From assembly GCA_038087875.1 (NCBI GenBank), contig JAXLNO010004732.1, positions 1-51,170 of the forward strand: a stretch of 51,170 nt of DNA. The letters run 5' to 3'. Shown here in pieces: positions 29,644 through 51,170 of the stretch. Below the pieces are notes generated by a model. The model worked only from the letters and a program-made list of their open reading frames with translations, had not been told where the DNA came from and searched no databases. The stretch comes from Malacoraja senta (Eukaryota). Position 1 is the stretch's first letter. Each line of letters begins with the position of its first letter. A program made the translations under genes and the position numbers.

Positions 29644-30639
29644 TTATAATGGGGGATTTAATACTGTATCCAGCACAGCATTACCAAACCCTCTGAGATC
29701 TTTAATCTCCTTGTGGTAATACTTGTGAAACATCTGTTCACTTGCCCATCCTGCGGCCATGAGAATAAGGTCTATTAGCACGTCTGAATCCCTGGCCGCT
29801 GATGTTGATGCCGCCCTGGTGGAATGAGATTTAAATTTATCAGTATCAATACCTGAATATCTCAACACCTGTTTCAACCATCGTGAAATTGTTTGTGTTG
29901 ACACTTTCTTATGAGGCTTTTTATGACTAATAAAAAATGCCAATTCGGCGCCTCTTAAAACTTTTGTTGTTTCTATGTAACATTTCACATATGTTACTAC
30001 ACACAGTCGTGAATCTGTAGGATATGCTAAAAATTCCAACTTGCATCCTGTGAACCCAGGTCTACTTTGCTTCAGTAAATCATAGACATAGAATGTCACG
30101 GCATTTTGCCCTACTTTCATTCTATCAATTCTGAGTTTCTGTAATGTGTGAACTCTCTGTGCTGAAACTAATGCCATGAGCATAACCAATTTCATGGTAA
30201 TTTTGGATAATGACAGAGTTTCAACTGGATTCCAATTCCTTAGGAACATCAGTACATCTTTTACATTCCAAATTTCTGTATACCTGGGTCTGGGAGGATT
30301 AGAGTTGAAAATTTCTTTCATAAACCTACAGACCCAAGGATGTGCTCCAATTGGAGTTTGTTCTGATTCACTGCTTAAATATGCAGAGAGTGCACTTCGT
30401 GCAGTATTAATTGCACTATAACTTAATTTCAATTCATAGTGTAGAGTTGAAAGAAACTCTATTACATCTGAAATTTCTGCTGTGTTATATGCAATATTCT
30501 TTCCTGAACAAAACACCTCCCATTTCTTTATATATGAAATGTACTGCTTCTGGGTACTATTCCTCCAGGCTGCTGTCATAACATCCACCGTACGGTCTGA
30601 TAATCTTTTTCCAAGATATGGCCTTCTTAGAATCTGCAA
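29644..30639 (-). CDS. DIRS tyrosine recombinase (open frame, 331 aa)
   Basis: N-terminal WRNSTQKQY; catalytic R (SAQRVHTL), HSTR, GW and Y (FHKYY). The track start is TTG; the first ATG is internal (DVMTAAW). Confidence 0.9.
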   Translation of the reverse strand: MQILRRPYLGKRLSDRTVDVMTAAWRNSTQKQYISYIKKWEVFCSGKNIAYNTAEISDVIEFLSTLHYELKLSYSAINTARSALSAYLSSESEQTPIGAHPWVCRFMKEIFNSNPPRPRYTEIWNVKDVLMFLRNWNPVETLSLSKITMKLVMLMALVSAQRVHTLQKLRIDRMKVGQNAVTFYVYDLLKQSRPGFTGCKLEFLAYPTDSRLCVVTYVKCYIETTKVLRGAELAFFISHKKPHKKVSTQTISRWLKQVLRYSGIDTDKFKSHSTRAASTSAARDSDVLIDLILMAAGWASEQMFHKYYHKEIKDLRGFGNAVLDTVLNPPL

Positions 30640-30682
30640 ATCAACAAACCAATACGATTATGTAAAGGATGTGATTCATTAG

Positions 30683-32540
30683 TCACAGGGTGTACAAGCA
30701 GTTTAATCTGCTTTGGAATAACCATAAGGGTTTTGGTTTTTTTTCCCCCATTTTTAACACCAGTGGGTACCACACCTGTGTAGGCCAATCTGGTACTACC
30801 AAAATCCCTGAGGCTGAATCTTGTTTAATTTTCTGTATGCATTTGTGGATTAAACAAAATGGTGGAAACGCATACAGAAACATACCACCCCAATGTAGCG
30901 AGAAAGCATCCACCACTACTGCACCAGGATCAGGTTCCCATGACACATACTTAGGCAACTGGTGGTTCAATCTTGATGCAAACAGATCAATTTCTGGCAT
31001 TCCAAATTGTGTGATAATTTGTGTGAATATTTTCCGAATTAACATCCATTCTGTATTATCATTAAATTTATGTGATCTTTTGTCTGCAATTGTATTAATT
31101 TTTACCTGGTAAATATTGCTGACAGCCACATTTTTCTGGCAATACCCCAGGTCCAAATTTCATTTGCCAATTTATCACATGATTCTGATTTTATACCACC
31201 CATGTGATTTATGTATGCTACAGCTGTAGTATTGTCAACCTGTACCTGAACATGCACATTTCCCATATCAGTGCAATAAGCTCTAAGGCCGTAAAATGCG
31301 CCTAATAGCTCTAGGTAATTGATTCCCAGTTTTTCCAGCAAAGGTACTTCATTCACATTCCACCTACCTCCACAGCTGGAAATCATGTTAGTAGCGCCTC
31401 AACTCAGCACACTTACATCAGTCTGTAGAGTGACGGAAGGTGTTTCTACCAGAACTTTTCTGGAAGCATTAGAAACATTGTTAATCCACCATTCTATTTC
31501 TGTAATGGATTGAATTGTTAATTTCATGGGCCTATCAAAATGCCCTCTATTCATTTTTAACGCTTGTACCTTAGCTCTCTGTAAACATTGATAATGCAAT
31601 GGTCCAAACGTGACCGCTGGAAACCCTGCAATTAATTTGCCCAGCAAACTTGCCACTTCTCTAATTGAAGGTGTGTCCTCGTTAATGGGTTTTATGCAAC
31701 CTTCAATTAATTGCAGCTTTTTATCTTTTGGAAAAGTGATTACCATGTGTTCGGAGTTAATTGTGAACCCTAGGTAATCAATCTTTTTGCTTGGTAACAA
31801 TTTAGATTTTTGTAGGTGAATCATGAAACCTAATTTCTCAAAATGTATTTGACTCTGGATACTGACAATTTTGCAGCAGCCAAAGTGTCCCCTACAATGA
31901 GGATATCATCTAAATAAGCCATTAATACATGGCCCTCAGCTCTTAACAGAGCTAAAATTTGGTTTGAGCAATTTAGTGAATAATCTTGGTGCTGAAATCA
32001 GACCAAGCAGAATAATATGCATTTTGCAGATCTATGCTTGCCTTATAGCAATTCTTTGTGACTAGCTAAATGGCATTAGTAAATGTTTCCATTTTGAAAT
32101 GTTTCTATTGTACATAAAGGTTAAGATTTGTCAGATTGGAAATGATTCTATATCCACCATCCCTTTTCTAGGAGAATATTCCTAGGAGAATATTTGACAC
32201 AAACTGATGGTGTTGTTCTCCTGACATTTATATCATCCTTTTCTGCATAAAGTTTTTCAATTCTCCTTTGATCAACCCATTCTCTTCCTTTGAGAAAATC
32301 CGTGACCAGTTTGAATTATGCTGAATTGGAGGATCCAAACGTGGAGAGAACTCAATTTTGAATCCTACAATGCTACATAGAATAAATGAATCATTTGTTA
32401 TTGATTGCCATTCTTTTAGGAAGAATCGTAACCTTCCCCCTATTTGTGAGTGTGAAACATTTGTTGTGTTTCTTACCAGACCAAGCCCCCTAACCTCGGG
32501 GTTTGCCACCGGCAGTTGTTGTCCCCTTCTAGTAGGCACA
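30683..32540 (-). pseudogene. DIRS RT / RNase H / DAM-like methyltransferase ORF, frameshifted
   Basis: GGRLRFF..EW; YLDDILI region ~31900; KSKLLPSKKIDYLG; TDVS; INYLELLG; VDNTTAVAYINHMGG; ADKRS; DLFASRLN...DAFSLHW...YAFPPF. Confidence 0.9.
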
Positions 32541-34137
32541 TTGTAACCTCCACGTATCCTCGGTGCAGCACGTCAACGTGTATACGAGAATGATAGGATT
32601 GTTCCTTCTCCAGCACCACATTTCGCCTGTAGGGATACTGCCTTCTCACCGCTCTGCTCAGCATAGGTGATCCTTTAGTTTCTTTGTTAGATTTTCTCCA
32701 AAACAGATTTAGGCATTTGTATATTGGATGGTTTGCAGAGCCTGCATACTTAGGATGAATATTTGGTCTTATTGCATTTTTATGAATACAATTTATTTCA
32801 AAGTGCACACTACACATGAGTGCTACATTTTGTTGTGAATACGATATATAACCTTCATCCAACCACTGACCCCAGAAATTTCAGCACTTGTGTAATTTCA
32901 ATTCTTGTGAGCGTAAACCACTGCTCAAATTACCCATATCAAGTTTATTCACTGCTGTAACTGCTACAATTTCCCGGGTCTCATATTTTTTTGATAGTCT
33001 CATCCATGGTTAATTCCTGGGCTGATGGGAGAGTAGATAATTTATAGTCATAGCTATTTCCTCTCTCAAAGGTTCCCCTGTTACTCTGGGAGCAGCAAAG
33101 TTTTGTGCCAGCCTTGGAACATTTTTGGCTCTGATAATGGGCTCTGGTCCTCATTTAAATCATCATCTAAATCTAGATATTCATTTTTATGTTGGGTAAT
33201 TTCTGGCTCCCCTGTTTCAGGTAAGTCTCTGCCAGATTCCCCCTGCGCGGGCTCTCTTGTAGGCCCACGGACAGGCAGCCCTGCTTCAGGTGCTGCTGGC
33301 TCTGGCTCAATTCTAGGCCAACGCTTCATTATTTTTACACTTTATATTTGTCGGTGCTGGCACATTTATCATTGCACGTTTGTGCTGCCTTTTGTTCAGG
33401 CATTTCTAGTACTGGCTCTCCAATAGGCCAACACATAACTTGCCTTTTTTCTGGCATTTTTGGGCACTGGCTCTCCTGTAGGCCAACCTCTTTAATGTTT
33501 CTGCACAGGCACTGATGGCTCTCCTGTAGGCCACCCTTGTGCCTGTTCCAAGGCACCTCCTGTGCTGTACTTCATTGGCTAACACCGACTTAAATCCTCC
33601 TGTGGGGGTTCTTTACAAATCATCTGCCCCATAAGGAGTTAAAAAGTTTTTGACCCTTGCAGTGTAATTCTCTTTCCTGCCTGAGGAGGGCATACCTCCG
33701 GGTCTGACTCACTCGAGTCCACAGGTCGGGCCGATTTTTTTTTCTCAGCCTTGCGCCCGCCCGCGGCGGTTTAACGCACATTCGACCACGACGGGAGTTA
33801 ATGGCTTCGCTGCCACTGACTCCCCTGACTGACGCCCGCTACCCTTAGGATCTGGGGTTTTACTACGGTGCGTCCCTGGCCGCCTCTCCTTCCCATTTCT
33901 CTATAATAAACTTGTGTGGAGCTCCACGAACAAGTCTAAACGGGAAGGAAACGCTCCTGTAAGTGAAAAGTAACGCACTTACCTTCCGACTTTTGTTTTA
34001 CTTTTGTTTTACTCACCGGCTGGAGGAGCTCCTGCTCCTCCACACACGGTCATGAACGCTATGCGTCTGATCGATAATGACGCGTGTGCGGCTGGACGGG
34101 GCTTCTTCACGTAGTCACTCACGTGACTCCGAAGTAA

Positions 34138-37100
34138 AATTGTTATTTAGACCCAATCCTGGACAGACTCTCAACAAAACCGGCTCCTACCATAGCCTCA
34201 GTGCAAACTTTAAATGATTTAACTAAGACTAGGAATATGGTTGACATTTGGCGACTGCAGCATCCTACTAACAGAGATTTCTCTTTCTATTCTCATGTCC
34301 ACAAATCTTACACTAGGATTGACTATTTTTTGATTTCGTCTGAATTACTGTCCAGTATAACAAATTCCACCTATCATAATATTTTGATTTCTGACCATAG
34401 TCCGGTGTAACTTCAATTTAAATATATTCTGTCCAAACAAAAGTACAGCTGGTGCTTCAACCCTCTTCTTCTTAATGATCACTCTTTTATTGACCAAATG
34501 ACTGCATGTATAGATGAGTTTCTTACCATAAATGATAATGGGGAAGTCTCTGATTCCACTTTATGGGAGGCTTTTAAGGTTGTGATGAGAGGCCATATCA
34601 TTTCATTTGAATCATATACAAAAAGAGAACTTAATCGTCGCCTTAGGGATATTGATAAGATGCTTCCAGTGCTTGAAGAGACGTATAGATCCTCTCTTAC
34701 AGTCTGACTACAATAAGATCTTAAAACTAAAATATGAATATAATACTATCCTCAATAAACGTCTTAGCAGCCAATTACTAAAGCTCAAACAGAAATACTT
34801 TGAACTCGGTGATAAACCAGAGAAATTATTAGCAAGTCAACTTAGAGGTGAGCAAGCTAATCGTGCCATTCATAGGATTAAATTAAAATCAGGTATACTG
34901 GTTACTGACTTGAAGCATATAAATGCTTGCTTCAGGGACTTTTATAAAGAACTTTATTCCAGTAAAGTAAAGCCCACTGAAACAGATTTTTGTGATTTTT
35001 TCACTAACCTAAATATTCCACAACTTGATGGAGCATCTAGAGATGATATTGACACTCAGATTTCTGTAGATGACCTTCTGGAAGCTATCTGAGCATTTCC
35101 CTCTGGAAAAGCAGCAGGCCCAGATGGCTTCGGCTGCGAATTCTATAAGGCGTTTCATGGAAAAATAGTCCCTCTCATGTTAAGAATGGTGAATGATTCA
35201 GTGAAAAACAAGAGGCTCCCTAGCTCACTCTATGAAGCTAATGTTTGCTTGCTCCTGAAAAAGGGAAAAGCAGAGACTGACCTTGCAAGTTACAGACCAA
35301 TCGCTCTTCTGAACTGTGACCAGAAGATGATAACTAAAGTCCTGGCCACAAAATTAGGTAAGCACATCTCAAAAATTGTACATCCTGATCAGACTGGATT
35401 TATACCGGGTAGATTCTCATTTAGTAATGTTCGTCTGCTGTTAAATACATTATATTCGGTTCATGACAAGGATACGCAAGCTGCCATCCTATCTCTCGAT
35501 GTTCAGAAGGCTTTCGATCAGATCGAATGGCCCTATATGCTAGAGACGTTAAAACAGTTTGGGTTCGGGATGAACTTTATAGAGTGGATTAAAATAATTT
35601 ATTCAAATCCAGTATCTTCTATTCTGACTAACACAGAAAAATCCCAACCTTTTGACCTGCAGCGCGGTGTGAGACAGGGTGATCCCCTTTCTCCCCTGCT
35701 GTTTGATATCGCTTTAGAACCTCTTGCAATAGGAATCAGGGGTCACCCGGGTATTCATGGTGTAAAATTTGGTAATGTTGAATGTCTTGTGAATTTATAT
35801 GCAGATGATTTATTAATTTGTTTATCTGATCCGGTAGTGTCAGTTCCCAACCTTCTGAACTACATTAAGTCATTTGGTAAACTGTCAGGATATACAATTA
35901 ACTGGGATAAAAGTGAATTCATGCCCTTGACGAATAATTTGAGCCCTGCTTTCTTGAAATCTTTGTCATTTAAATTAGTTACCACCCACTTTCCCTATGT
36001 TGGACTGAAGATTTCCAGAAACCCCAAACTTCTACTTAAATTGAATTTTTTGGACATGGTAGACAAATTAAAAGCTAGCAATAGGTGCTGGAAGCTGCTT
36101 CCCCTCTCAATGATAGGTCGCATCAATGCTATTAAAATGGTTGCACTTCCAAGATTTTTGTATCTTTTCCAAAACCTTCCTGGCTACTTACCTTTGTCTT
36201 TTTTCAAACAACTGGATTCGGTTATACTCTCATTTGTCTGGGCAGACAAATCCCCTCGCATTGCTAAAGCCCACCTACAGAAAAATGTGGACAGGGGTGG
36301 CCTCGGCCTTCCGGTACTGAAGCATTACTACTGGGCTGCAAATGCGAGGGCTCTCACTTTCTGGAAATGGGGTTTTCCTGATGATGACCGGTCTGATGTT
36401 TCCCCACTCTAGCTAAAAATTGAATCCATGTATGTTTCAGAGACCTCTCTCCCAGTGTTGCTCTTTTTCGGAGCACAGGTTCCCTACAAATTAGTTGGCC
36501 ATAACTTCATTCTCAGAAACTCCGTAAGGATTCTGAATCAAATAAAAACAAATTGGGGATTGGTAAATATCTCAGTGTATACCCCTATAGTACACACAAT
36601 CACTTGTTCAAACCGGCACTGATGGATAGAGTGTTTCTGGACTGGAGGGGGAAGGGGCTGTGTTGTATTGATGATCTCTACATAGATAATAAATTTGCCT
36701 CATTTTTTCAGCTCCAAACTAAATATCGCCTTCCTCAACAACACTTCTATCGCTACCTTCAAGTCGGGCAATTTGTACGGGAGCGTATCCCAGAATTCAT
36801 AGTCAAACCAAAAAGTCACATTCTTTATGATCTACTTCTCTCACAGCCTGACTCTAAACACTTGATCTCCCGCTTTGTCACTGCCTTTACGACACCAGTT
36901 GAAGCTGGTCATCTCAGGGAGGCCTGGGCTACAGAATTGGGCACTCCTGTGTCAAATGAACTGTGGGAGGAAGGTTTGTCCGGTATACAGAGTTGCTCTA
37001 TTAGTTCTAGATACAGATTAATTCAATTTAAAGTCTTGCATAGACTACATTATTCTAAAACCAAACTTAACAAGATTTTTGAATCGGTTTCCTCCATGTG

Positions 37101-37756: not shown

Positions 37757-38942
37757 GAAGTAATATCCTTCCTCTGTATATAATGATCCATTACAGCCCC
37801 TTCGGGTATTAATGACTTCTCCCCCTCCAGACCAGTCCCTCCACGCTTCACTGATCCCATTGCTATAACTGGGGATTGGCAGGTAATGGGATCCTACCGT
37901 CAGATGAGTCCCGTTAGCCCATCCACACAACAGCTGAAATCCAGCATTTACAGGGATACATTCCTTAGACACCTTACATTGGACTCCTTTATAGGTAAGG
38001 TTACATGCGGAACCGTGAACGGGCCCTTGCAGAGAGCAAGTGAGGTTATTTTTTAACATTTATGACTATACACCCGTGTCCTTGGTTACTAAAACAATTT
38101 TCATATTGCCTGTTGTCATTATTGGTGGTGAAGTTACATGGCCTAGCCGGTGCTCTTGACGCCGTCCTAGATCCATGATAGCAATTGTCGTAGGAGTGGT
38201 TATTGTTCTTAGGGAGCGGTAAGCAGTTGGCCGGTGGAGCGAGAAGCCTATCATAGCTGATGATAACGGGCTTGACAGGGACCGGTTTTTCATCCTGGCA
38301 CTTCACCAGTCGTTCAGTTCTGCCCCATGCAGGGGATGGGGTAAACAGGGAGGTAATTGATGTAATTCGTGGATAACAAACCACCTGCCCCTTCCCGAAT
38401 AGCTCGCTGTGTGCCTGAATAAATAGATTGGAGTTTTCTCATTCCCCTTTCTTTCCTCGTTTGTTCCATCCGTATTCAGGCTTTGTCCATTTCCAACCGA
38501 AACCGATTAACCCTACTGAGGTCGTCACACATATTAATGCCACGAAGACCCTCATCTTAGCGGTTTATTTCGTATCTGCGAACACAAGGGAAGGGAAAAG
38601 AAAAGAACGTGCAATTTCATAGCAAAATTAATTCGTACCCTGCTTTTCGTGGACCAGATCCCCCTCCCTGACCTCGACCTCCCCCCTTTGCTTGGTGTCA
38701 CCAAGCACTTTACAATGGTGCAAATGCACCGATGCCGATCGTCCTTCCACCTTTACCGCGGTGGGGGTGGTGAGGAGAACCTGGAAGGGGCCCAACCATC
38801 GAGGAGAAAGGGTGTCCTTACGAACGCAATTCTTAATCAACACATAAGAACCCAGGGTGATCCGTCCATCAACGGGAAAGTCTATGTCGCCCACATAAGC
38901 GGCCTTGATCTCCCCGTGAATCTCACGCAGGGCCCTTGTAAG
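37757..38942 (-). mobile_element. Endogenous retrovirus remnant (class I/epsilon-like): integrase C-terminus + 5' part of env
   Basis: PRWLGPFQVLLTTPTAVKVEGR..VHLHHCK (retroviral IN C-terminus). A signal-peptide-like MRVFVALICVTTSVGLIGFG at 38555 is followed by a Cys/Asn-rich frame with one stop and one frameshift. Confidence 0.8.
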
Positions 38943-39118
38943 CAAAGATACTAGAGGAGCAAGATAGACGACTCCTCCGAAATCCAATGGACTGACGTGT
39001 AGTACGCAATGGAACGTCACGGCCGCCATTTTCTAATGCAAAACGCGACTTCCGGTTTGCCTCCCGCTGCTTTGATCCAAAGATTATATAGCGGAGCGGA
39101 GCGCCTCTAGTATCTTTG
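38943..39118. mobile_element. 176-bp P-family MITE (or MITE + terminal remnant)
   Basis: Perfect 15-bp TIR CAAAGATACTAGAGG...CCTCTAGTATCTTTG. The interior resembles the 5' end of the P transposase element at 50345. No clean TSD. Confidence 0.75.
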
Positions 39119-39589
39119 GTGTAACCAGTGTAATTAGTGTTGTAGGGAACAGTGTTTGATATATCAAACAGTGTTTGATATAGCGCATCTATCACCTCAC
39201 ATATTTCAGTTAATTTTATTGTAAATGTTTTCCCCATTCCCCCATTTCCCTCCCATCTTTCCTCCCCAGCCGCCACCTTTGCGTAGTTTCCCTTGCATTG
39301 TATTGTGCAGCTTCCCTTGTATTGATTTAACACACACTACACAAAATTAAATGTAACTTATATATATATTTATATGAATGTGTGTTTGTGTGTGCCTGTA
39401 TGTGAGAGGCAAGTTGAGGGTCTGTCCCACCAGCATGCAATTGCATGCGTCCAGCGCGACCGAACGTGGTCGCTTGTGGTTTTAAATGTGCTATATAAAT
39501 AAAAGTGACTTGACTTGACATATTTCTCTAGTTTCTTTCTTCAGATTTCCTCTAATTTGTTTAGCAACCTTTTTCTTTCAATCTCTGTG

Positions 39590-39623
39590 TGCATGTATAT
39601 ATATAATTGTGTGTGTGTATCAC

Positions 39624-39659
<36 letters not shown>

Positions 39660-39790
39660 TATATATCACTATATATATCACAATATATATTACAATAAGT
39701 GTGTATATACATATATAAACACATATATTTGTATGTATACACATATATATATACACACACACACATATATATAAAATATATATGAAATCC
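39590..39790. repeat. Compound (TA)n/(CA)n microsatellite
   Basis: Direct reading. Confidence 0.95.
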
Positions 39791-40934
39791 TAATATTGTG
39801 AATAAAATATCCATGAACACAATGTCGAAATATTTTTCCATTATTTCATTCTATATTAGCGTAACACAGTGTAGTGCATACATCCCTACATATTTAAATT
39901 CAGTCGATAAGTTGGTCAAATAATATGGGGACCTTCTTGCTTTTTTTGACACATGGATTTTTAAAACTTGAATGTCTCATAACGATACATTTGTGGGTCA
40001 GCAGTATTTTGCACCAACCCCCACAATTTCAAATAATTCTAAATTGAACTTCATAAACAAGGAAAACACTTTTTATTTACATCATTTTGTGCGCGACATA
40101 TACAGGGTTGCAGTGTTTTGCATATCAGCTAATCAATAAAAGTGATGTCAAATTCAACATATTTCAAACAAAGGACAACATTTCCAACTTATATACAATA
40201 ACTAGACTAAGTTGGGTCCCAGCATCACACGGGAGGGCTGGTCACCCAATGCAATATTCCACCTCTCCACCAATTCCAATATTGCTGGCCAGTGCGGGGA
40301 GGGGGGGCTTTCTGTTGCGCTAGTATGGGTGTTGTGGGCCGAAGGGACTTGTTTCCAGAGGGCTAGTATGGACATTGTGGGTCGAATGGATTCTTGGGCT
40401 GGCAGCTCAGTCACTGAGGCCTGGCAGTACAGTCACTCAGACCTGGCAGGCTGGCAGCTGAGAAACTGCCAGAAATTCTGCCCAAAACAGGTGACAGACT
40501 CTGAGAGAAGGGGGAGAGGGTGGACTGAATGGATTATTGGCCTGGCAGTTCAGTCACTTACAGCTGGTGTGCTGGCAGTTCACTTACTCACGGCTCGTGG
40601 GTTGGCAGTTCTGTCACTGACGGCTGGAACCGATATTGCACCAACCCACTCAATTTTAAATAATTCATAATAGAGATCCATTAACATACTTCTCACTTTA
40701 TTTCTGACATGCATGGTAAGATTTACATAATTAACATTATTCTGTGCGCGAGATATACAGGGTTGCAGTGTTAAGCATATCAGCTAACCAGTGAAAGTGA
40801 TGTACAATTCAACGTATGTAACACAATGATAGCCCCACCCCTGCTTACACCAAAGACCAAAATGTCCAACGAAGATACAATAATAAATAATCGCCATTTG
40901 CATTGTTTTGTGCAGTTAACAAATCACAATTTCA

Positions 40935-41290
40935 CACAATGTACATAAGACGGCAGTTATTTGACAAATACTCCGCAGTTCGGTGTAGATCATGTCCTGT
41001 CGACATCTGAAATTAAAGAAAATATCATGCAGTCAATATGTTCTTATTCTGCATTAAATAACAGAGAGGTATAAAGAAAATGCTCTTTAGGAGAATATTT
41101 TTAAAAGGATGTTGCCATGAGGACTCGACTATCTGAGATCAATGATCTAACTACAGTGAGAGATTGAACAGGCTAAATAAAAATTTCAATATGCCACAGA
41201 AGTAATAAATGTTTTCTTACCTTTCCTCCTTAATGGGGAACCTGAAGAAAGACAAGTCGGGTTGCCTACATTGCCGATTGTTTTTCTCAG
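40935..41290 (-). pseudogene. Second, decayed THAP/P-transposase copy (partial exon 1, 214-bp intron, partial exon 2)
   Basis: NRQCRQPDLSFFRFPIKEER|gtaag at 41221; acceptor tttcag|ATGTCGACAG at 41006; RTAEYLSNNCRL is homologous to the copy at 48664-50242. Confidence 0.8.
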
Positions 41291-41462
41291 GTCCATCTGG
41301 AGCACACGGTATTGGGGGTAGGGTGTTGACATGGATAGAAAATTGGTTGGCAGACCGGAAGCAAAGAGTAGGAGTGAACGGGTCCTTTTCAGAATGGCAG
41401 GCAGCAGCGAGTGGAGTGCCGCAAGGCTCGGTGTTGGGGCCGCAACTGTTTACCATATATAT
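41291..41462 (+). mobile_element. CR1 RT fragment
   Basis: HGIGGRVLTWIENWLADRKQRVG...[11 protein letters not shown]. Confidence 0.9.
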
Positions 41463-41727
41463 CGAGCAACTGTCCATATGGTGCCAGCACAATAACCTGG
41501 CACTCAACACCAGCAAAACACTACAAAAAGTAGTAAACACTGCCCAGTCCATCATCGGCTCTGACCTCCCTTCCATCGAGGGGATCTATCACAGTCGCTG
41601 CCTCAAAAAGGCTGGCAGTATCATCAAGGACCCACACCATCCTGGCCACACACTCATCTCCCTGCTACCTTCAGGTAGAAGGTACAGGAGCCTGAAGACT
41701 ACAACGACCAGGTTCAGGATTAGCTAC

Positions 41728-44700
41728 TGTAGATGAGATATGCATGTGCCTTTAACATAGTGACCTCATACCTACTAACCACTCCCCATATCACAAGTAT
41801 ATCTACAACCTCCCCACCCACAGATCGCTCTCTAGTTCCTGTGACAGACCACGTACAGCTAGTGCAATGTGTAATGCTCCAGTATGAATAAAGATAGTAA
41901 AGTAACGATGCCTCGTTATGGATTCTTTACATGGTGTCGAATAACTTACCTTGCGCCTCCTGTTTATCGGTTTATCATTTAATTTTGTCCCAGTTTTTTG
42001 TTTCCCCCGCCCTCCTATTTCTTTGTCATGGCCTCTTCTGCCCGTAAGCCCGATGTGCTCGTTTTCGATTTAGACATCGCCCTTCGATGGGACGTATTCA
42101 AACGTGACTTTGAACACTATTTCACGATCGCTCATCCTGCCGCCACCGCCGATCTCAAAGCCTCTCTGCTTCTCAACTTGGCTGGTCCCGAGGCCCTGAC
42201 TCGCTCTGACTTCTTCGTCTACGCTGATGGCGAATCAGCTCGGGACCCGGTATGTCTGGTGGCTAAGTTTGATGCTATTTGTGATATTCCGACAAATTGC
42301 ATCTTAGAACGTTTTAAACTGTTCGCGCGGCGTCAGCTCCCTGGGGAATCTGCTGAGAACTATGTCATTGCGCTGCGGCACCTCGGCAGGCGCTGCCGCC
42401 TCCACGCGTGGAACCCCGATGAGATTCTCAGGGACCTACTGGTTTACGGTCTCCGTGATGAGAAGCTTAGGGCCGAACTTCTGCGCAAGCCGGATCTGAC
42501 TTTAACCGATGCTATGCACGCTACTCGCTTAGCTGAAGCTGTTTCCTCGGCGGCGTCGCCGGCTGAGCAGGCGATCAACTTTGCCAGCACTCCCAGTCAT
42601 CTCATGAACACACCCCAGTCGCGACCCCCGGGGTCGCTCGCTGCTCGAGGGGGACGCGCCCCGGGGTTCGGTGCTACAGGGGGAGGTACCCGGCAAAGGT
42701 GCCCTAATTGCAACTTCACGACTCATCAATACAATGTGTGCCCTGCCTTGGGTAAAACGTGTAATGTCTGCAAAAAATTGAACCATTTTGCTGCGGCTTG
42801 TCGTTCCCGTGGGAAGCCTGTCGCTGCTCGAAGGGGAAATTTAAACAACCTTCTACAAGCTGACAGTGCGCTCAGCTCCCAGTGTTATTTCGATGAACAG
42901 TCTGTTTCTGCATCTGACTCCTCTCAGGGGGAGACCAACTTGTTTACCGTGTTGGACGCACCTGCTATGATAACGGACCCTTCTGTGCTAGTCACTGTGA
43001 ACAACTCGACCTTCACTGCTAAGATTGACACGGGGGCTGTGGCCAACGTAGTGTCAACATCTCTTTTCAACCAGATAAGAACTAATGAGCAGATATTTTC
43101 CCAGAGCTCAACCTTGCATGCCTACGGTGGGGAGATTCTTACTCCTGTGGGCAAGGCCACGCTACGCTGTAAGATACTAGAGACCTCTCGGCCCCTCACC
43201 TTCTATCTCCTCGATCAAAAATGCATTCCCCTGTTGGGGATCCGGGCATGCCAGGAAATGGGACTGGTGTACTTCCACCGTGACATCCACCAGGTGCAGA
43301 CTCTTATGGACCCGCTGGCCGATTATCCCGACCGCTTTGATGATCAGCTAGGCAAACTACCCTGCAGCTACAAGATTGTAGTGGACCGTAAGATCGTTCC
43401 TGTGGTCCATGCTCCTCACCGTGTCTCCTTCGCCATGAGGGACAGAGTGGAGGCGACACTACACAGTATGGTACAAATGGGCATCCTAAAGGCGGTCGTC
43501 GAGCCCACCAGCTGGGTCTCTTCCATGGTTGTTGCTGCTAAAAAGGACATGAGTGAGATACGCATCTGCATCAACCCCAAAGACCTCAACCTGGCCATTA
43601 GACGCCCTCACTACCCTATGAGAACGGTGGAAGAACTCGCTGCACAGGTTGGTCCAGCAACGGTTTTTTCTGTCCTCGATGCCAAAAGCTCCTTCTGGCA
43701 GATACCACTGGACGAGCGGTCGTCCATTTTGACAACTTTCGCCACCCCCTACGGAAGGTTTCGGTTCCTCCGAATGCCATTCGGAATCAACTCTGCCAGC
43801 GAAGTATCTCAGCGGACAATGGAGCAGTTGTTTTTAGGTCTACCATGCGCCATAATTGTTGACGACATCCTCGTTTACGGTAAGGACGTTGCCGAACACG
43901 ATGTCAACCTCCGCCAGGTCCTGGACCGGGCCCGGCAAATCAACTTGAAACTGAACCCCAAGAAGTGCCGATTCCGCGTCCCGGAGGTCACCTATGTTGG
44001 ACATGTATTCACCGCTGAGGGGTTAAAGCCAGACCCGCAGAAAACGGCTGCCATTTCAGGGATGCCCCCTTCTACCAATGTGGCAGGCCTGCAACGCTTC
44101 CTCGGCTTGGTAAACTACCTGGGGAAGTTCATCCCCGACCTCAGCGAGCTCAGCGCTCCCCTGAGGGATCTGATAAAAAAGGACACGTCCTGGCTTTGGT
44201 TACCCAACCATCAGAAGGCATTCGACATTCTTAAGTCTAAGCTGATCAGCACCCCCACGCTCAAGTTCTTTGACCTGCAGCGTCCCATTGTCCTCACCTG
44301 CGACGCCTCTCAGTTCGGACTCGGTGCCGCCTGTCTCCAGGTCCATGACGGCCTGCAGCTGCCTGTCTCCTTCGCGTCCCGCACCATGACCGCCACCGAA
44401 CAGCACTACGCGCAGATCGAGAAGGGGCTACTGGCCGTGGTGTTTGCCTGCTCCAAATTCCGGGACTACATCGTGGGCAACACTTTCACTGTTGAAACTG
44501 ACCATCAGCCTCTTGTCACCATCCTCAACAAGTCGATCCATGTGGTCTCAACACGCCTGCAGCGCATGATGCTGCAGCTCCAGCGCTTCACGTTCACGGT
44601 GGTTTATCGTAAGGGCAAGGACATGTTCGTGGCCGACACGTTGTCTCGTGCCCCGCTGACGTCCACCGCTCGCCACCAATATGAAATGTCTGAGCTATTG

Positions 44701-45493
44701 GTGCTACAATTGAACATCGTCCCCTCACAGCAGATGAAGTCCCTGGTTGAACACACTACCAATGACCCTGCCCTGCAACAGCTGTCTGCCGTCATCCGGC
44801 AGGGCTGGCCTGACCGTCGTTCGGCACTGCCGGCTGGTGCCGTGCCCTACTTCCTGGTCCGTGACGAGCTCGTACTACACGACGGCGTGGTGGTGAAGGG
44901 TCACAAGGTGGTCGTGCCCGCGGCGCTGCACGACCACTATTTTCAAGTCGCTCACCGCGGTCATCCTGGGGCCGAAGCCACCGTGTCTCTCGCCAAGAGC
45001 CAGTTCTATTGGCCGGATATGGCCAAATACATCCGGGAGAGGGTCTCCTCGTGTTCCACCTGCAACAGCCTCGCCCCCCACCAGCAGCGTCAGCCGCTTC
45101 TGCAGCAGCCCGCGCCCGAACTGCCCTGGATGGCGCTTGCCGCCGACATTTTCGAGTGGCGGGGCAAACACTTCCTGGTTCTCGTTGACTCCTACTCCAG
45201 CTGGTTTGTGGTTGACCGGCTGCATTCCATAACCTCTTCGGCCGTCATCGATAGGTTGTACCCTCATTTTGGCACTTTTGGCCCCCCGGCAAGCCTGCAA
45301 TCGGACAATGGCAGCCAGTTCACGAGCTCATACCTACTAACCACTCCCCATATCACAAGTATAACTACAACCTCCCCACCCACAGATCGCTCTCTAGTTC
45401 CTGTGACAGACCACGTACAGCTAGTGCAATGTATAATGATCCAGTATGAATAAAGATAGTAAAGTAACGACGCCTCGTTATGGATTCTTTACA
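41728..45493 (+). mobile_element. Gypsy/Ty3 LTR retrotransposon with internal 3' deletion
   Basis: 5' LTR 41728-41931 (TG...CA); PBS-like TGGTGTCG at 41932; truncated 3' LTR 45327-45493; 5-bp TSD GCTAC (41723-41727 and 45494-45498). Confidence 0.96.
42028..45453 (+). CDS. Gypsy gag-pol polyprotein (single open frame; integrase truncated)
   Basis: CCHC knuckles; protease IDTGA; RT LDAKSSFWQI/MPFGI/VDDIL; RNase H CDAS..GLGA, TDHQPL; IN H..HPG/CSTC, ADIF, SDNG; then runs into LTR sequence. First ATG at 42028. Confidence 0.95.
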   Translation: MASSARKPDVLVFDLDIALRWDVFKRDFEHYFTIAHPAATADLKASLLLNLAGPEALTRSDFFVYADGESARDPVCLVAKFDAICDIPTNCILERFKLFARRQLPGESAENYVIALRHLGRRCRLHAWNPDEILRDLLVYGLRDEKLRAELLRKPDLTLTDAMHATRLAEAVSSAASPAEQAINFASTPSHLMNTPQSRPPGSLAARGGRAPGFGATGGGTRQRCPNCNFTTHQYNVCPALGKTCNVCKKLNHFAAACRSRGKPVAARRGNLNNLLQADSALSSQCYFDEQSVSASDSSQGETNLFTVLDAPAMITDPSVLVTVNNSTFTAKIDTGAVANVVSTSLFNQIRTNEQIFSQSSTLHAYGGEILTPVGKATLRCKILETSRPLTFYLLDQKCIPLLGIRACQEMGLVYFHRDIHQVQTLMDPLADYPDRFDDQLGKLPCSYKIVVDRKIVPVVHAPHRVSFAMRDRVEATLHSMVQMGILKAVVEPTSWVSSMVVAAKKDMSEIRICINPKDLNLAIRRPHYPMRTVEELAAQVGPATVFSVLDAKSSFWQIPLDERSSILTTFATPYGRFRFLRMPFGINSASEVSQRTMEQLFLGLPCAIIVDDILVYGKDVAEHDVNLRQVLDRARQINLKLNPKKCRFRVPEVTYVGHVFTAEGLKPDPQKTAAISGMPPSTNVAGLQRFLGLVNYLGKFIPDLSELSAPLRDLIKKDTSWLWLPNHQKAFDILKSKLISTPTLKFFDLQRPIVLTCDASQFGLGAACLQVHDGLQLPVSFASRTMTATEQHYAQIEKGLLAVVFACSKFRDYIVGNTFTVETDHQPLVTILNKSIHVVSTRLQRMMLQLQRFTFTVVYRKGKDMFVADTLSRAPLTSTARHQYEMSELLVLQLNIVPSQQMKSLVEHTTNDPALQQLSAVIRQGWPDRRSALPAGAVPYFLVRDELVLHDGVVVKGHKVVVPAALHDHYFQVAHRGHPGAEATVSLAKSQFYWPDMAKYIRERVSSCSTCNSLAPHQQRQPLLQQPAPELPWMALAADIFEWRGKHFLVLVDSYSSWFVVDRLHSITSSAVIDRLYPHFGTFGPPASLQSDNGSQFTSSYLLTTPHITSITTTSPPTDRSLVPVTDHVQLVQCIMIQYE

Positions 45494-45789
45494 GCTACTT
45501 CCCCACAGCCATCAGGCTATTAAACTTGGCTCGGACAAAACTCTGAACATTAATAGCCCATTATATGTTATGTGCACTTTATCAGTTTATTTATTCATGT
45601 GTGTATAAATTTATATAATTGTATATGGACACACTGATCTGTTTTGTAGTCAATGCCTACTATGTTCTGTTGTGCTGAAGCAAAGCAAGAATTTCATTGT
45701 ACAATCAGGAACACATGACAATAAACTCAATTGAACGAACTTGAACAATAGTATTACTTCAAATAAATAATGTCTGAAAATTATGCACT

Positions 45790-48236
45790 TTATTTATGTT
45801 CCACTTTTTGAAGTTTTTTACAACTCCTTTTAACAGTCATGTTATGCATTTTTCTATTCTTGAATTTGAGTCCATAGTGCATGTGGATACTCACAAAGAT
45901 TGCTACAATTCTAATCTTGACTCTATTGCAGCACAAGTTCATGTCTTTGTATTGCTGTGTGTTATGTATTGCTGTGTTTATTAGATGGGAAATGTTATCC
46001 CTGGTCATCTTAACATCATCAAATTCTGTGCGGAACACTTTCTCGCACACTTCACAGAACCCAAGAAAGTATTCCGAAGGCACCATCAATGAGCCAAAGT
46101 CAGACGTTGATGTGTTGTATGCTTTGTGATGGATGAATATAATAATAATAATAATAGATTTTATTTATATAGCGCTTTTCAGGACTCAAAGTCGCTTTAC
46201 AATTGAGAGTCAGGAATAAACAAAACAAAATAGAGCAGTAAGACAGAGGGGGGGGGGGGAACATGGGACTAAGGGTTTGCAGAGGTGAAGAGATGGGTCT
46301 TGAGGCGGGACTGGAAGATGGTGAGGGACTACTAAAGTGGCATCCGTTCGTAATAGAACTTCTCTGCATGTGTGGCATTTTGAGGACAGTTCATGTGAAG
46401 AGATGATTTTGTGACAGATGTGTCCTGCGATGTAAGCTAGTGTATTCTCTTCAGGGAGATCTAGTGAAATGCTGCAGACTGCATTGTGTTGTTTTGTTTT
46501 ATTGGTATGGGAGATAGATGGAGATGGTTTCTTGACTCTGTTTTTTGTTAGTGTTTGCAATGTTAAGATAAATCTGTCTGAGTCGGGGGAACAGTTTGCA
46601 CTCACAGATGGCTTTATCAGTTCAGCCACCATAACCATCCGGAAAGCACATCGAAACTCCTTCGCTGATGGATTTTCTCTGAATCCGCCCTTTCGCTGAA
46701 TAGTGGAGAACAAATTCTCTACAACATCCTGATTGATCCGAGATGTGAACATAAAACGGGCGTCTGTGCTTTCCTTTATGTGCTGCCACAGCTGTGAAAT
46801 GCAAGAAATTGCAAGCCGCCATCCCTTGACAAACAACACATTTTTAGCTCCAAGCACTGTCAAGCTTCGGAGTACAGTCAAGCATGATTCAAAGAATGAC
46901 TTATGCGCAGACTTTTCAGAAATAGGCCTCCTTAACATTTTGGGGTCCTTGAAAAACCTGCTGTTAAATGAGTCAAACAGTCCATCAACCATTTCAATGA
47001 ACTCTGCCGCATAAACAGCCTCCCCAGGTAACTTTCCAAGAGCTGCATAGGTGTAGACGCCTGCTGCTACCGAATGGCTAAGCACCTGCGCAGCCTTGTT
47101 GACTCTCATTTTAGAGAAGCTGTTTAAAACAAAATGGCCTCTGGTTAATTTATGGGCTTTTCTAATGGGCAACTGTGAATCATGATCATAAAATGTGTAA
47201 ATATTACCCCATTTGATATGTTTTTTTATGCCATCCTCTCCCTTGACATCAAAAACATATTTCTCCAAATTTGAGCGAGTGTTTTTCAACAAGTGGGGTG
47301 GGTCATGCATGCAATAGATATTGGTTCCCCCGTGGACGAAGAAAGGATGGTCTTCTGTCACACCCAAGTTGGAGTACAGGCGAATATTGCTTGGGCCTTG
47401 GTCACAAACAACGGCATTAGGCTGTAGTCCAATAGCCTTGACCTTCTGTAAACATTCATTGAGTAATGTTTGTAGTTTGTCAGCCGTTGTGCAGTCCCGT
47501 GAAAGAAAGTAACCTACAGGTTGCTTCCATTTCCCCATCAAGCCTCTAACCATGAAAACTAGGGCATGGTTGGCAGGCCTTGATGTCTTCCCTTGGGATC
47601 CAAAGTCCTCAAAACCTTCCACTGAATCTTCAGTAATATTGTAAGAGAGGCTTGCACGTAAACTCATTTCGTCAAAGGAGACTACACATAATGTATCCCT
47701 CTCTGACATCCCCGCAACCCTGTCTTTCAAAAGTTCAAAGATCTTAGGGGGAAACCCAGGCCTCACTTCAATATTGCTCAACCACCTACGTAGTGATGAG
47801 ATTGATGGAAGTGTGAAAATGCACTGGCAGAACTGATATGCTCGGGGACTCTGGTGGTAGAGGGACAAGGCAACCACCTTGTCTGAATAACTCCATCGTC
47901 TTCCTCTTGCACTTCTACGTCCAGCCGCATTACGCAACTGCGACGCAAAGAAAGACAGCGCTGGTTCTTGTAAAAATTCACCAGCCCCTCAGATCAAGTC
48001 ACTAATTGTCTTAATTTCTGTAGTATTCTTTTTCATTGATAATTTAATCTGTTGTACTCTTTTTTTGAGGGGGAAAGTACGCTGTCTTTCCTTCTTCAGA
48101 GCTCTGCTGTCATTCACATTTGGTGTGGATTGAAGATCAGGTTTTTCAGGAGTTGTAGAGACATTGCTGGGTTCTTTACGATGAATTTTGTCTGCAGCTG
48201 AGCAGTAAGAATGTTCGGCCAGTATGTTGTGTGACA
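45790..48236 (-). pseudogene. P transposase exon 3 (coiled coil + catalytic core + C-terminus)
   Basis: SPRAY, LPS..SL, FDEM, KWKQPVGYF, CDQG, HDPPHLLKN, MRVNKAAQVLS, NQDVVENLFS, GSLMVPS. One in-frame TGA at 47989-47991 and a ~200-bp insertion. Confidence 0.92.
46136..46328 (-). mobile_element. L2-like LINE 3' end with (TTA)n tail, inserted in the P transposase
   Basis: ccctcaccatcttccagtcccgcctcaagacccatctc...aataaaatctattattattatt; transposase frame resumes as FIHHKAY. Confidence 0.8.
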
Positions 48237-48663
48237 CTGCCAAGACCAAAAAAATGAGAAAGGGAAAAAGAAATGTCAAGCATACTAATGAAAAAGATGA
48301 AGCATATACATGTAAATAAATCAGCATCTACTAATAATTATAATTAAAAATAGATGTGATGCACCAATTTCAATCTACCAGAAGAAAAGTTAAATCAATT
48401 TAAATGTTGTATGAATTATGCTTGAGGAAGCTTTAAATGGATGTTCTTACTTTAATTAAATACTAGTACGCATTCCATCAGCCCACACTGTGTAGTCTTA
48501 CGTGTGATTATAGTTTTGTGAACATTTCACAAATGAAAATAAAAGTACCATACATGCCATTACATATTGACCATTGGCAATTATATCAGTTTGGATATAA
48601 CTTTTTAATATTTAGCCAAAATGAGAGAATATATTTTATTTTAAAAAGGAGAAAATTACTTGC

Positions 48664-48932
48664 CTCTTTGCTGTTTTAAAGGCGTTGGTGAGGATGGGAG
48701 GTTCTCATTCTTCCTCTTGAGTAACCTGCGTTGGGAAGACAGACGTTTTGGCGGGTTAGGAATGTCAAAGAGCGTTGGAACTGCATTCCAATTTAGCCTG
48801 TTCTTGGTCTGCTTGTTGGAAAACTGGTCAAGTTCAAAGTGTAAAGAACAAAGACAACAGTTGGCTGACAAGTACTCCGGAGTTCAGTTCAGGAGATCTT
48901 GTCGACGAGTATTCTGGACCCACTGTTGACAT
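48664..48932 (-). pseudogene. P transposase exon 2 (THAP C-terminal half)
   Basis: Acceptor tttcag|; RCQQWVQNTRRQDLLN*TPEYLSANCCLCSLHFE...RLNWNAVPTLF (C2CH and AVPTLF box); in-frame TGA; probable GC donor. Confidence 0.88.
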
Positions 48933-49631
48933 CTGAAATTACAGAACATATCATTTAGGATTAACTACATGCCTGCAGAATGGATGATGTATCACTTAAG
49001 TGCAATTGTTTTCAGTTGTGTGGAGAGACCTGTATATTGAAGATGCATTTTGCCTCTAATATGTCAATTTACCTTAAATGTAGAAGAGAATATTAAAAAC
49101 TTCTTACAAAGACCATTAAATATTTTCTTTCTATCCTCTTTTGGACCTAAGGCATAGCAGGGCTGCCAACTCTCACACAGAGGGAAGGGAGGGAGAGAGG
49201 GAAGGGAGGGAGGGAAAGAACGGAGAGGGAGAGAGGGAGGGAGATCGAGAGAAGAGAGGGGAGAGAGAGATCGAGAGAAGGGGGAGAGAGAGAGATCGAT
49301 TCTGACTCCGCGGTGTTTTCAATCCAGCGCTGCCCGCCCGCGGCGGGACGCCCTCACACCGCAGACCGCAGACCCTGTTGGTGGTCGGCGGTCACAGCAC
49401 TCCGGAGCGGCGACCCGGCAAGGCATCGCCCGCTCCGTGTTGGTGTCCCAGCGCTGAGAGAGAGAAGGAGAAAGAGAGAGAAAGGGGAAAGAGAGAGAAG
49501 GGGAGAGGGAGAAGGGGGTGAGGGAGAAGAGGGAGAGGGAGAAGGGGGAGAGGGAGAAGGGGAAGAGGGAGAAGGGGGAGAGGGAGAGTGGAACGATGGC
49601 ACGTTATAAGGCGCAGCCGTCCCATTCCGGC

Positions 49632-49667
49632 CAAAGATTATAGAGCAGAGCTCCTCTAGTATCTTTG
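49632..49667. mobile_element. 36-bp double-ended P-family remnant
   Basis: CAAAGATTATAGAGCAGAG-CTCCTCTAGTATCTTTG flanked by ATTCCGGC / ATTCCGAC (7/8 TSD). Confidence 0.85.
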
Positions 49668-49715
49668 ATTCCGACCGCCGCCGCCGCCGCCGAACCCCCC
49701 GCCCACCATTGCACC

Positions 49716-49752
49716 CAAAGATTATAGAGCGAGTGGAGTTTTATAATCTTTG
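49716..49752. mobile_element. 37-bp double-ended P-family remnant
   Basis: Perfect 11-bp TIR CAAAGATTATA...TATAATCTTTG flanked by a perfect 8-bp TSD ATTGCACC (49708-49715 and 49753-49760). Confidence 0.9.
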
Positions 49753-50133
49753 ATTGCACCCTTCTTCACGGCGGGCTTGTGATCTTTGCTTGTGGTGTCT
49801 CGACAATTCGAGGGACATAACGGGTAACAGCCGCTGCGTTCCCGGACTCGAATCTGAGCTCGAAAAATCTGGTGGTCACTGGGCCTAATGTGTCCATAAC
49901 ACGGGCCATATTTTGGAGACCCCTGCCTTACAAGAACAAAACCAAAAACGTACAGAAGTGTTACAATTATTGGCTTTATTATTGGTAAATAAAGATCTAT
50001 TAAAAATAATTCTAATAACTTTCTAATGTACCGACAAACCTAGTTTCCCAATGACCGTTGATGGGAGAACAGAAAATAACATTTTCAGTTCAGAATAAAA
50101 TCGACAGATGTCACATATAATATATTTTCTCAC

Positions 50134-50242
50134 CTTTCTTTTTTTCGGGGAACCTAAAGAATGACAGGTCGGGTCGTTTACATTGACGATTTGAGCAATT
50201 GATAGCAGAGCAGTGATATGAAGATTTAGATGTAGATGCCAT
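50134..50242 (-). pseudogene. P transposase exon 1 (THAP N-terminal half)
   Basis: MASTSKSSYHCSAINCSNRQCKRPDLSFFRFP; donor |gtgag. One nt short in the A7 run relative to the phase required and to the second copy. Confidence 0.88.
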
Positions 50243-50389
50243 GACTGTAGTCGAGGCACGCCGGTAAAATGGCGTCGACAACCACCCATGGCATACTACC
50301 CTTTCTTTGCTGAGTGGCGCATCTTGCTCTGCTATATAACCTTTGGTGAAGAGCAGGTAAGGATAAAAGCACTGCCATGCAGCGGGAGG

Positions 50390-50915
50390 CAGGAATGCAG
50401 CCAGTGATGCCATGCATTCCCTTTAATGCAGCCAGTGATGCATGCATTCCCTTTAATGCAGCCAGTGATGCATGCATTCCCTTTAATGCAGCCAGTGATG
50501 CATGCATTCCCTTTAATGCAGCCAGTGATGCATGCATTCCCTTTGATACAGCCAATGATGCATGCCTTCTCCTTAATGCAGCCAGTGACGCATGCATTCC
50601 CTTTAATGTAGCCAGTGATGCATGCATTGCCTTTAATGCAGCCAGTGACGCATGCATTCCCTTTAATGCAGCCAGTGACGCATTCATTCCCTTTAATGCC
50701 GCCAGTGACGCATGCATTCCCTTTAATGCAGCCAGTGGCGCATGCATTCCCTTTAATGCAGCCAGTGATAAATGCATTCCCTTTAATGCAGCCAGTGATG
50801 CCACGCATTCCCTTTAATGCAGCCAGGAATGCATGCATTCCATTTAATGCAGCCAATGATGCATGCATTCCCTTTAATGCAACCAGTGATGCATGCATGC
50901 CCTTTAATGCAGCAG
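50390..50915. repeat. 30-bp minisatellite, ~17-18 copies (ATGCAGCCAGTGATGCATGCATTCCCTTTA)
   Basis: Direct tandem copies; source of the repetitive ORFs in the track; lies inside the repeat homologous to 6085-6360. Confidence 0.97.
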
Positions 50916-51170
50916 GGGGAACATGCACAGGTGCTTGCAGGCCGATCCCCGCATTTTATAATTCACACTATATTCACACTTAATATAGCCCTTCAGGCAG
51001 ATTTCTGTCTTATTTCCAAACCATTTCCCCAAACTCACGAAGCCGACCTTGCGTGACAACGGTGTGGATGTGGGGAGTCCAGACCGCCCAAAACAGGCCC
51101 TTCGGCCCATTCCCCCCCCCTGCCAGCCCGCAGTTGGTATTGTGTGAATCAGGTCTACGTTCGCCCAAAT

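What the first reader, a model, noticed from the sequence alone, without database searches (positions are those of the whole stretch)
38943..50345. One P-family system in a single window: transposase terminus, MITE and remnants share the same ends
Seen: on the minus strand the transposase element begins CAAAGGTTATATAGCAGAGCAAGAT...ACTC...GTAGTATGCCATGG...CGCCATTTT. The 176-bp MITE begins CAAAGATACTAGAGGAGCAAGAT...ACTC...GTAGTACGCAATGG...CGCCATTTT. Homology between 6085-6360 and 50346-51095 stops exactly at that C (cctgctcttcac|), which defines the insertion point. Established: THAP9/P-type transposases have CA-starting TIRs and 8-bp TSDs, and P elements are extinct or domesticated in most studied vertebrates. 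Inference: this is a recently mobile, possibly undescribed chondrichthyan P family with autonomous, MITE and scar forms.
Basis: partly seen in the sequence, partly recalled or inferred. Interest (0 to 1): 0.72.

Follow-up and report, generated by a model that had tools for sequence, protein, structure and literature searches.

The report
Dead skate P-element copy with relatives
This stretch of skate DNA holds a broken copy of a P-element-type jumping gene, a 176-base miniature relative and two tiny two-ended remnants that all begin with the same end sequence; this is an ordinary, multi-copy transposon family that has not been written up for cartilaginous fishes, not a working element or a host gene.

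Summary
On the minus strand a P-type transposase gene starts 103 bases inside a CAAAG terminus at 50345. It has a split THAP domain, HTH, an RNase H core with a GTP-binding insertion, and an intact DDE triad. The 176-base element at 38943-39118 and two 36-37-base elements in intron 1 carry the same kind of terminus. The flanking repeat's homology stops exactly at 50345/50346.

- The "autonomous" copy is dead. It has a 1-base deletion in exon 1, two in-frame TGA stops and a 200-base SINE-like insertion in the coding sequence.
- It has no 3' terminus. A LINE carrying a nested Gypsy element follows 47 bases after the stop codon.
- The 176-base element has perfect 15-base inverted ends but no target duplication, and its copy number was not tested.
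- Contigs from four related organisms cover the whole gene many times. In two of them the end regions are far deeper than the body. This points to a multi-copy family with non-autonomous derivatives, not THAP9.
- One remnant has an exact 8-base duplication and a matching empty site in paralogous copies.

The scan had already noted P-type scars and a spliced P/THAP family elsewhere in this genome. This window links such ends to a transposase. Verdict: new member of a known kind, modest interest.

The parts
50243..50345 (-). 5' terminal region of transposase copy A: CAAAG terminus (50345-50321) and leader up to the ATG. It is homologous to the left 90 bp of the 176-bp element.
50134..50242 (-). 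Exon 1, the N-terminal half of the THAP domain. It ends in phase 1 because one A of an A-run is missing, so it is out of frame with exon 2.
   Evidence: THAP E=0.006, profile 1-27.. table 4 (other copies carry an extra base at 50138). Remnant B keeps phase 2.
49069..49925 (.). Unrelated 857-bp repeat nested in intron 1; it hosts both mini-elements.
   Evidence: joint 49068->49926 (a contig of X6 lacks it).
49632..49667 (+). Mini-element 1 (36 bp). It consists of a 20-nt end like copy A's terminus joined to an 18-nt end identical to the 176-bp element's terminus. Flanked by ATTCCGGC / ATTCCGAC (7/8).
49716..49752 (+). Mini-element 2 (37 bp) with CAAAGATTATA at both ends and an exact 8-bp duplication ATTGCACC. 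Paralogous copies show the empty site with one ATTGCACC.
   Evidence: joint 49704->49753 (X19, X1).
48665..48932 (-). Exon 2, the C-terminal half of the THAP domain (AVPTLF motif). It has an in-frame TGA at 48886-48884. The downstream intron has a GC donor.
   Evidence: (THAP E=3.7e-6, profile 50-87).
46333..48236 (-). Main exon: EHSY motif, coiled coil, in-frame TGA at 47991-47989, HTH, RNase H N-terminal part, GTP-binding insertion, RNase H C-terminal part. Catalytic D (47673-47671), D (47403-47401) and E (46719-46717) are kept.
46130..46329 (-). SINE-like retroposon tail inserted in the coding sequence between ...DATL and FIHHKAY. It brings stop codons.
   Evidence: (P0001, P0002 and P0004 are continuous here). 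(summed depth 316,000-395,000 in X19; loose end at 46329).
45747..46129 (-). Last part of the coding sequence, stop codon 45795-45793 and a 47-bp 3' stub. No terminal repeat.
41296..45746 (+). Insertion block that removes or displaces the 3' end of copy A. It is a LINE fragment (41296-41738 and 45492-45746) split by a Gypsy-like LTR element (41739-45491; 193-bp LTRs, 97% alike).
   Evidence: loose ends at 45491/45493 and 45725/45728.
40947..41282 (-). Remnant B, a second P fragment: part of THAP exon 1, a short (about 215-bp) intron and the start of exon 2. It is cut at the LINE junction.
   Evidence: 79% to 50117-50191.
38943..39118 (+). 176-bp non-coding element with perfect 15-bp inverted ends (CAAAGATACTAGAGG). 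The left 90-135 bp resemble copy A's 5' end. The right 41 bp resemble mini-element 1. Flanks CTTGTAAG / GTGTAACC give no TSD.
50346..51150 (.). Flanking repeat R with a 30-bp minisatellite, an inverted copy of 6026-6358. It serves as the paralogous empty site for the 5' junction.
   Evidence: loose end at 50354 (X6).

Best explanation
The window holds members of one P-superfamily (P element / THAP9-type) cut-and-paste transposon lineage of a skate.

Copy A (50345 down to about 45747, minus strand) is a once-autonomous element. It has a CAAAG terminus, about 100 bp of leader, and a three-exon gene for a THAP-HTH-RNaseH/GTP-binding transposase. It is now dead. Exon 1 has a 1-base deletion, there are two TGA stops, and a retroposon tail sits in the C-terminal coding region. 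Its 3' end is lost or displaced by a LINE that later received a Gypsy element.

The 176-bp element and the two 36-37-bp elements are non-coding derivatives carrying the same kind of terminus. The mini-elements are what remains at sites where a longer element inserted, making an 8-bp duplication, and was later excised or almost wholly deleted during repair.

Shown: domain content, catalytic triad, lesions, shared termini, 8-bp duplications, an empty site, and multi-copy status in several organisms.

Inferred: that this transposase lineage mobilised the small elements, that the mini-elements are excision or repair products, and that the canonical element has slightly different 5' and 3' ends (CAAAGrTTATAkAGC and CAAAGATACTAGAGG).
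For: Transposase identity:
- Pfam hits PF12017, PF21787, PF21788 and PF21789 on the main exon.
- THAP halves on exons 1 and 2.
- Alignment to Drosophila P transposase 6p5a at E=4.6e-42, with FDEM, CDQG and VVEN matching D230, D303 and E531.
- 233 relatives, the best at 79, 74 and 72% identity.
- Atlas neighbours are all THAP9 / P transposase clusters.

Termini and insertion evidence:
- Eight CAAAG termini in 51 kb.
- Terminal homology anchored at base 1 of both elements.
- TSDs of 8/8 and 7/8.
- Empty site in paralogues (joint 49704->49753).
- The flank repeat stops exactly at the terminus and continues in its other copy.

Copy number:
- Every bin from 45734 to 50400 is covered in four organisms. 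Summed contig depth is 20,000-58,000 in X19, against 17-50 for single contigs.
- In X1 the 3' region reaches 46,000-64,000 and the 5' region 2,000-30,000, against 400-700 for the body.

Known P features for comparison: 8-bp TSD, CA-starting TIRs and a 17-nt staggered cut.
Against: - Copy A has only one end, so no TIR pair or TSD can be shown for a transposase-bearing element.
- The 176-bp element has no TSD, and its copy number is unknown.
- Similarity between its left end and copy A is moderate (about 73% with gaps), so it may belong to a sister family.
- hAT elements also make 8-bp duplications and often start with CA. The P assignment of the ends therefore rests on physical linkage in one copy, plus co-varying depth of the terminal and exon-1 bins.
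- Summed contig depth is not a copy number.
- The mini-elements keep 18-20 nt per end, slightly more than the 17 nt expected from the Drosophila cut.
Confidence: 0.8

Rival explanations
1. The small elements belong to a related but separate P family. The transposase lineage of copy A did not mobilise them, and the shared ends reflect common ancestry only.
For: The left end of the 176-bp element is only about 73% like copy A and needs gaps. Two terminus types coexist. No 3' end of copy A is available for comparison.
Against: Mini-element 1's left 20 nt match copy A's terminus at 18/20. The internal motif at 39078 matches at 28/33. Transposases commonly cross-mobilise elements that share terminal and subterminal sites.
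Confidence: 0.15
2. The CAAAG termini belong to another superfamily with 8-bp duplications (hAT), and a fragment of such an element merely abuts the P transposase gene at 50243-50345.
For: 8-bp TSDs and CA starts are not specific to P. Copy A shows one end only.
Against: The terminus lies at the position expected for a P element, about 100 bp before the ATG. The depth of the terminal bin follows the exon-1 bin in three of four organisms. Contigs of X1 join intron-1 sequence directly to the ATCTTGCTCCTCTA motif. No hAT transposase is present in the region.
Confidence: 0.04
3. The locus is the skate's domesticated THAP9 host gene.
For: It has a THAP9-like domain set and an intron-containing structure.
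Against: There is a frameshift, two stops and a retroposon in the CDS. Thousands of diverged contigs cover it in four organisms. A transposon-type terminus is present. The neighbours are all transposable elements, with no host gene found.
Confidence: 0.01

Closest known systems
Zebrafish Pdre elements / zfTHAP9 (P-like transposons of a vertebrate)
   Same: P-type transposase with THAP domain. Short terminal inverted repeats starting with CA, 8-bp target duplications, and one coding copy plus many internally deleted copies.
   Different: The termini differ (13-bp CATACCTGTCAAC in zebrafish, CAAAG... here). The host is a skate. The coding copy here is broken and lacks its 3' end. The gene here is split by two introns, one with a GC donor.
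P elements with MITE relatives in insects (Anopheles gambiae P/MITE families; Drosophila BuT5)
   Same: Short non-coding elements share terminal and subterminal sequence with a P transposase-bearing element (PMC1562414 and PMC3698922, seen).
   Different: Those MITE families were shown to be multi-copy with TSDs. The 176-bp element here is a single observed copy without a TSD.
Drosophila melanogaster P element
   Same: Same domain order and catalytic D-D-E. 8-bp duplication. Remnants of about 2 x 18 nt fit a long staggered cut (17 nt in Drosophila).
   Different: 31-bp TIRs in Drosophila against about 15-20 bp here. About 30% protein identity. The stagger length here is unknown.
Human THAP9
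   Same: Homologous protein architecture.
   Different: THAP9 is a single-copy domesticated gene without terminal repeats. This is a decayed member of a multi-copy family with a transposon terminus.

Membership tests
P superfamily DNA transposon | N-terminal THAP zinc-finger DNA-binding domain | tested here: met
   Exon 1 matches THAP profile 1-27 (E=0.006). Exon 2 matches profile 50-87 (E=3.7e-6, above the cut-off). Exons were searched apart, not joined.
P superfamily DNA transposon | HTH plus RNase H-like core interrupted by a GTP-binding insertion domain | tested here: met
   PF12017, PF21787 (E=2e-39), PF21788 (E=2e-13), PF21789.
P superfamily DNA transposon | Catalytic D, D, E triad | tested here: met
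   The triad aligns with D230, D303 and E531 of 6p5a (numbering counted from the alignment).
P superfamily DNA transposon | 8-bp target site duplication | tested here: inconclusive
   Met for the two mini-elements (8/8 and 7/8) with an empty site. Cannot be read for copy A, which has one end only. Not met for the 176-bp element.
P superfamily DNA transposon | Terminal inverted repeats at both ends of a transposase-bearing copy | tested here: not met
   Only the 5' terminus is present. The 3' end is replaced by a LINE from 45746 downwards.
P superfamily DNA transposon | Long staggered cut (17 nt) leaving terminal-repeat footprints | not testable with these tools
   Remnants of 36-37 bp (18-20 nt per end) fit the idea but do not prove it.
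MITE | Short, non-coding, with terminal inverted repeats | tested here: met
   176 bp with 15/15 inverted ends.
MITE | Flanking target duplication | tested here: not met
   CTTGTAAG against GTGTAACC. The right flank does not continue the retroviral integrase fragment on the left.
MITE | High copy number | not tested
There is no other copy in the window.
Domesticated THAP9 gene | Single copy, open reading frame, conserved synteny, no transposon ends | tested here: not met
   Multi-copy, broken frame, a terminus present, and only transposable elements around it.

The most novel reading that the evidence does not exclude
Skates carry a large P-element family that is young in places, with intact and possibly still active copies elsewhere in the genome. 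This family would be the so far unidentified parent of the many 8-bp-flanked palindromic 'excision scars' that the scan has noted near gene starts in this genome. That would make skates the first non-teleost vertebrates with a demonstrably mobile P system.
Probability: 0.25. Interest if true: 0.6.

Novelty: new member of a known kind. Interest (0 to 1): 0.4.

Why it matters
P-type transposons are well studied in flies and known in zebrafish. No paper on them in cartilaginous fishes turned up in the searchable library.

This window ties a P-type transposase physically to CAAAG-type ends. The same ends occur on tiny two-ended remnants with 8-bp duplications. That gives a candidate parent for the P-like scars the scan has flagged elsewhere in this genome.

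If intact copies exist, they would be a second vertebrate source of a P transposase for mechanistic comparison. As it stands, the window shows a decayed copy of an ordinary repeat family.

Tried and rejected
- Looked for the 3' terminus of copy A with degenerate terminus patterns and by BLAST of the 3' stub and of 39119-41761. Nothing was found.
- Tested whether 38943 and 50345 are the two ends of one 11.4-kb element. Rejected: the flanks CTTGTAAG and GTGAAGAG do not match, and the 176-bp unit has its own right end.
- Looked for the other half of flank repeat R with its expected duplication. It is absent.
- Ran two metagenome scans. They gave one close relative, L001 (74% protein, 71% DNA), which holds neither THAP exons nor termini.
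- Sequence look-ups in the scan's own notes were blank.
- Did not build a named phylogeny against THAP9 and Pdre2, because no tool returned those sequences.
- Did not join the exons into a spliced protein. Exons were searched apart by reference.
Full report
**What is there**

The quoted sequences are at the stated places. The minus strand reads CAAAGGTTATATAGCAGAGCAAGAT from 50345. The plus strand reads CAAAGATACTAGAGGAGCAAGAT from 38943. These are the only two matches of CAAAG-N(8-14)-AGCAAGAT in the window, against 0.03 expected. Both continue with ACTC, GTAGTAyGCmATGG and CGCCATTTT.

A gapped alignment anchored at base 1 of both scores 21.5. Shuffles gave mean 10.9, sd 2.1 and a largest score of 22.5 in 1000. 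The maximum over 1920 random window segments was 19.5. The homology is real but moderate.

The flank 50346-50389 is an inverted copy of 6315-6358 (91%), and the match ends exactly at 50346/6358. The copy at 6359 onwards continues with other sequence. A loose end in run X6 shows that further copies of this repeat also continue past the junction. The transposon therefore sits inside a copy of that repeat, and 50345 is a true element boundary.

**The gene**

Exons were searched apart, by reference.

- Exon 1 (50242-50134) matches the first third of the THAP profile, and exon 2 (48932-48665) matches the last part.
- The main exon (48236-46333) carries an EHSY motif, a coiled coil, the P-element HTH, the RNase H N-terminal part, the GTP-binding insertion and the RNase H C-terminal part.
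- It aligns with Drosophila P transposase 6p5a at E=4.6e-42, and the three catalytic acidic residues are kept.
- The best database relatives are unnamed proteins at 79, 74 and 72% identity. A teleost (Coilia grayii) protein is 62% identical.

**The copy is dead**

1. Exon 1 ends in phase 1 while exon 2 needs phase 2. Remnant B has the fitting phase, and contigs of other copies carry one more base in the A-run at 50138.
2. There is a TGA inside the THAP domain at 48886-48884.
3. There is a TGA at 47991-47989, where relatives have E or R.
4. A 200-bp SINE-like tail (46130-46329) sits between ...DATL and FIHHKAY, where relatives are continuous. Its bins reach a summed depth of more than 300,000 in X19.
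5. An 857-bp unrelated repeat lies in intron 1. A contig of X6 lacks it.
6. 47 bp after the stop codon the sequence becomes the 3' end of a LINE (45492-45746, continued at 41296-41738). That LINE is itself split by a Gypsy-like element (41739-45491; 193-bp LTRs, 97% alike).

No 3' terminus of the P copy exists anywhere in the window.

**Other family members in the window**

- Remnant B (41282-40947, minus strand) holds part of THAP exon 1, a short intron and the start of exon 2. It is cut at the LINE junction.
- The 176-bp element has perfect 15-bp inverted ends. Its left 90-135 bp resemble copy A's 5' end, and its right 41 bp resemble mini-element 1. It has no target duplication. It lies at the edge of a retroviral integrase fragment that does not continue on its other side. 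Its copy number was not tested.
- Mini-element 1 (49632-49667) joins a 20-nt end that matches copy A's terminus at 18/20 to an 18-nt end identical to the 176-bp element's terminus. Its flanks match at 7/8.
- Mini-element 2 (49716-49752) has an exact ATTGCACC duplication. Contigs of two organisms show the same host repeat with one ATTGCACC and no insert.

Elements of 36-37 bp lack room for internal transposase-binding sites. I therefore read them as what is left after excision or near-complete internal deletion of a longer insert. Their size, 18-20 nt per end, is close to the 2 x 17 nt that the Drosophila cut would leave. That reading is an inference.

**Family status**

Contigs of four organisms were laid at 80% likeness or more. 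They cover every bin of 45734-50400.

- Summed depth of the gene body is 20,000-58,000 in X19, while single contigs have depth 17-50.
- In X1 the last 330 bp reach 46,000-64,000 and the 5' region 2,000-30,000, against 400-700 for the body.
- In X6 the 5' 430 bp reach 185,000-430,000, against 6,000-14,000 for the body.

Summed depth is not a copy number. Even so, the pattern is that of a multi-copy family whose end regions are amplified in non-autonomous derivatives. Listed contigs differ from copy A by 4-17%. This, the lesions, and the all-transposon neighbourhood exclude a domesticated THAP9 gene.

**Comparison and novelty**

P transposons with 8-bp duplications, CA-starting repeats and deleted derivatives are known in zebrafish. 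P-related MITEs are known in Anopheles and Drosophila. Fish repeat surveys tabulate a P superfamily. I found no paper on P elements of cartilaginous fishes. Repbase and Dfam could not be queried.

The scan's own notes record P-type scars with unknown parent and a spliced P/THAP family on other pieces of this genome. This window adds the physical link between such ends and a transposase.

**Limits**

- The two metagenome scans gave no termini.

**Verdict**

This is a new member of a known kind, with interest 0.4.

Noticed in passing
window 39078-39118 and 49632-49667: The right 41 bp of the 176-bp element have the same build as mini-element 1: a 5'-type end fused to a 3'-type end. The small element therefore looks like a 5' fragment plus a two-ended module. 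No simple deletion model explains this.
   Followed up: partly
window 41282-41300 and 45747: The LINE block is flanked on one side by copy A's 3' stub and on the other by the middle of THAP exon 1 of a second copy in the same orientation. Either two P copies lay head to tail before the LINE arrived, or the LINE insertion came with a rearrangement.
   Followed up: no
window 41739-45491: Gypsy-like LTR element with 193-bp LTRs (97% alike), AGCTAC on both sides, a 1151-codon open gag-pol frame, and an integrase cut short by an internal deletion that runs into the 3' LTR.
   Followed up: partly
window 29137-34143: Tyrosine-recombinase ORF (29644-30639, minus strand; Phage_integrase plus SAM-like domain). 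It lies between long inverted repeats (29137-29476 and 34078-34143, 95-99% complementary). This looks like a DIRS- or Crypton-like element.
   Followed up: no
window 50394-50930 and 4701-5180: A 30-bp minisatellite (about 18 units) lies in the flank repeat, and a 24-bp minisatellite (about 20 units) lies near its inverted partner. The flank repeat begins with an exon-like CAG|GTAAGG.
   Followed up: no
window 48221-48210 and 48664: The transposase carries an EHSY motif (the HCF-1-binding type found in THAP proteins) at the start of the main exon. Intron 2 has a GC donor. Another reader noted both for this family elsewhere in the genome.
   Followed up: partly
proteins P0010 and P0003, P0121-P0134: A teleost (Coilia grayii) protein is 62% identical to the skate transposase. 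The P0003 cluster (72% identical to the skate transposase) contains 15 retrieved members, all 677 aa long and 97.6-99.9% alike. They are either young copies or one conserved gene seen in many runs.
   Followed up: partly
window 49069-49925: The 857-bp repeat in intron 1 ends, on the minus strand, with CAGGGGTCTCCAAA. It holds GA-rich tracts like those at 5640-6650. Its type was not determined.
   Followed up: no
window 38711-38852: A fragment of an MLV-type integrase C-terminal domain (minus strand, E=1.4e-13) borders the 176-bp element.
   Followed up: partly
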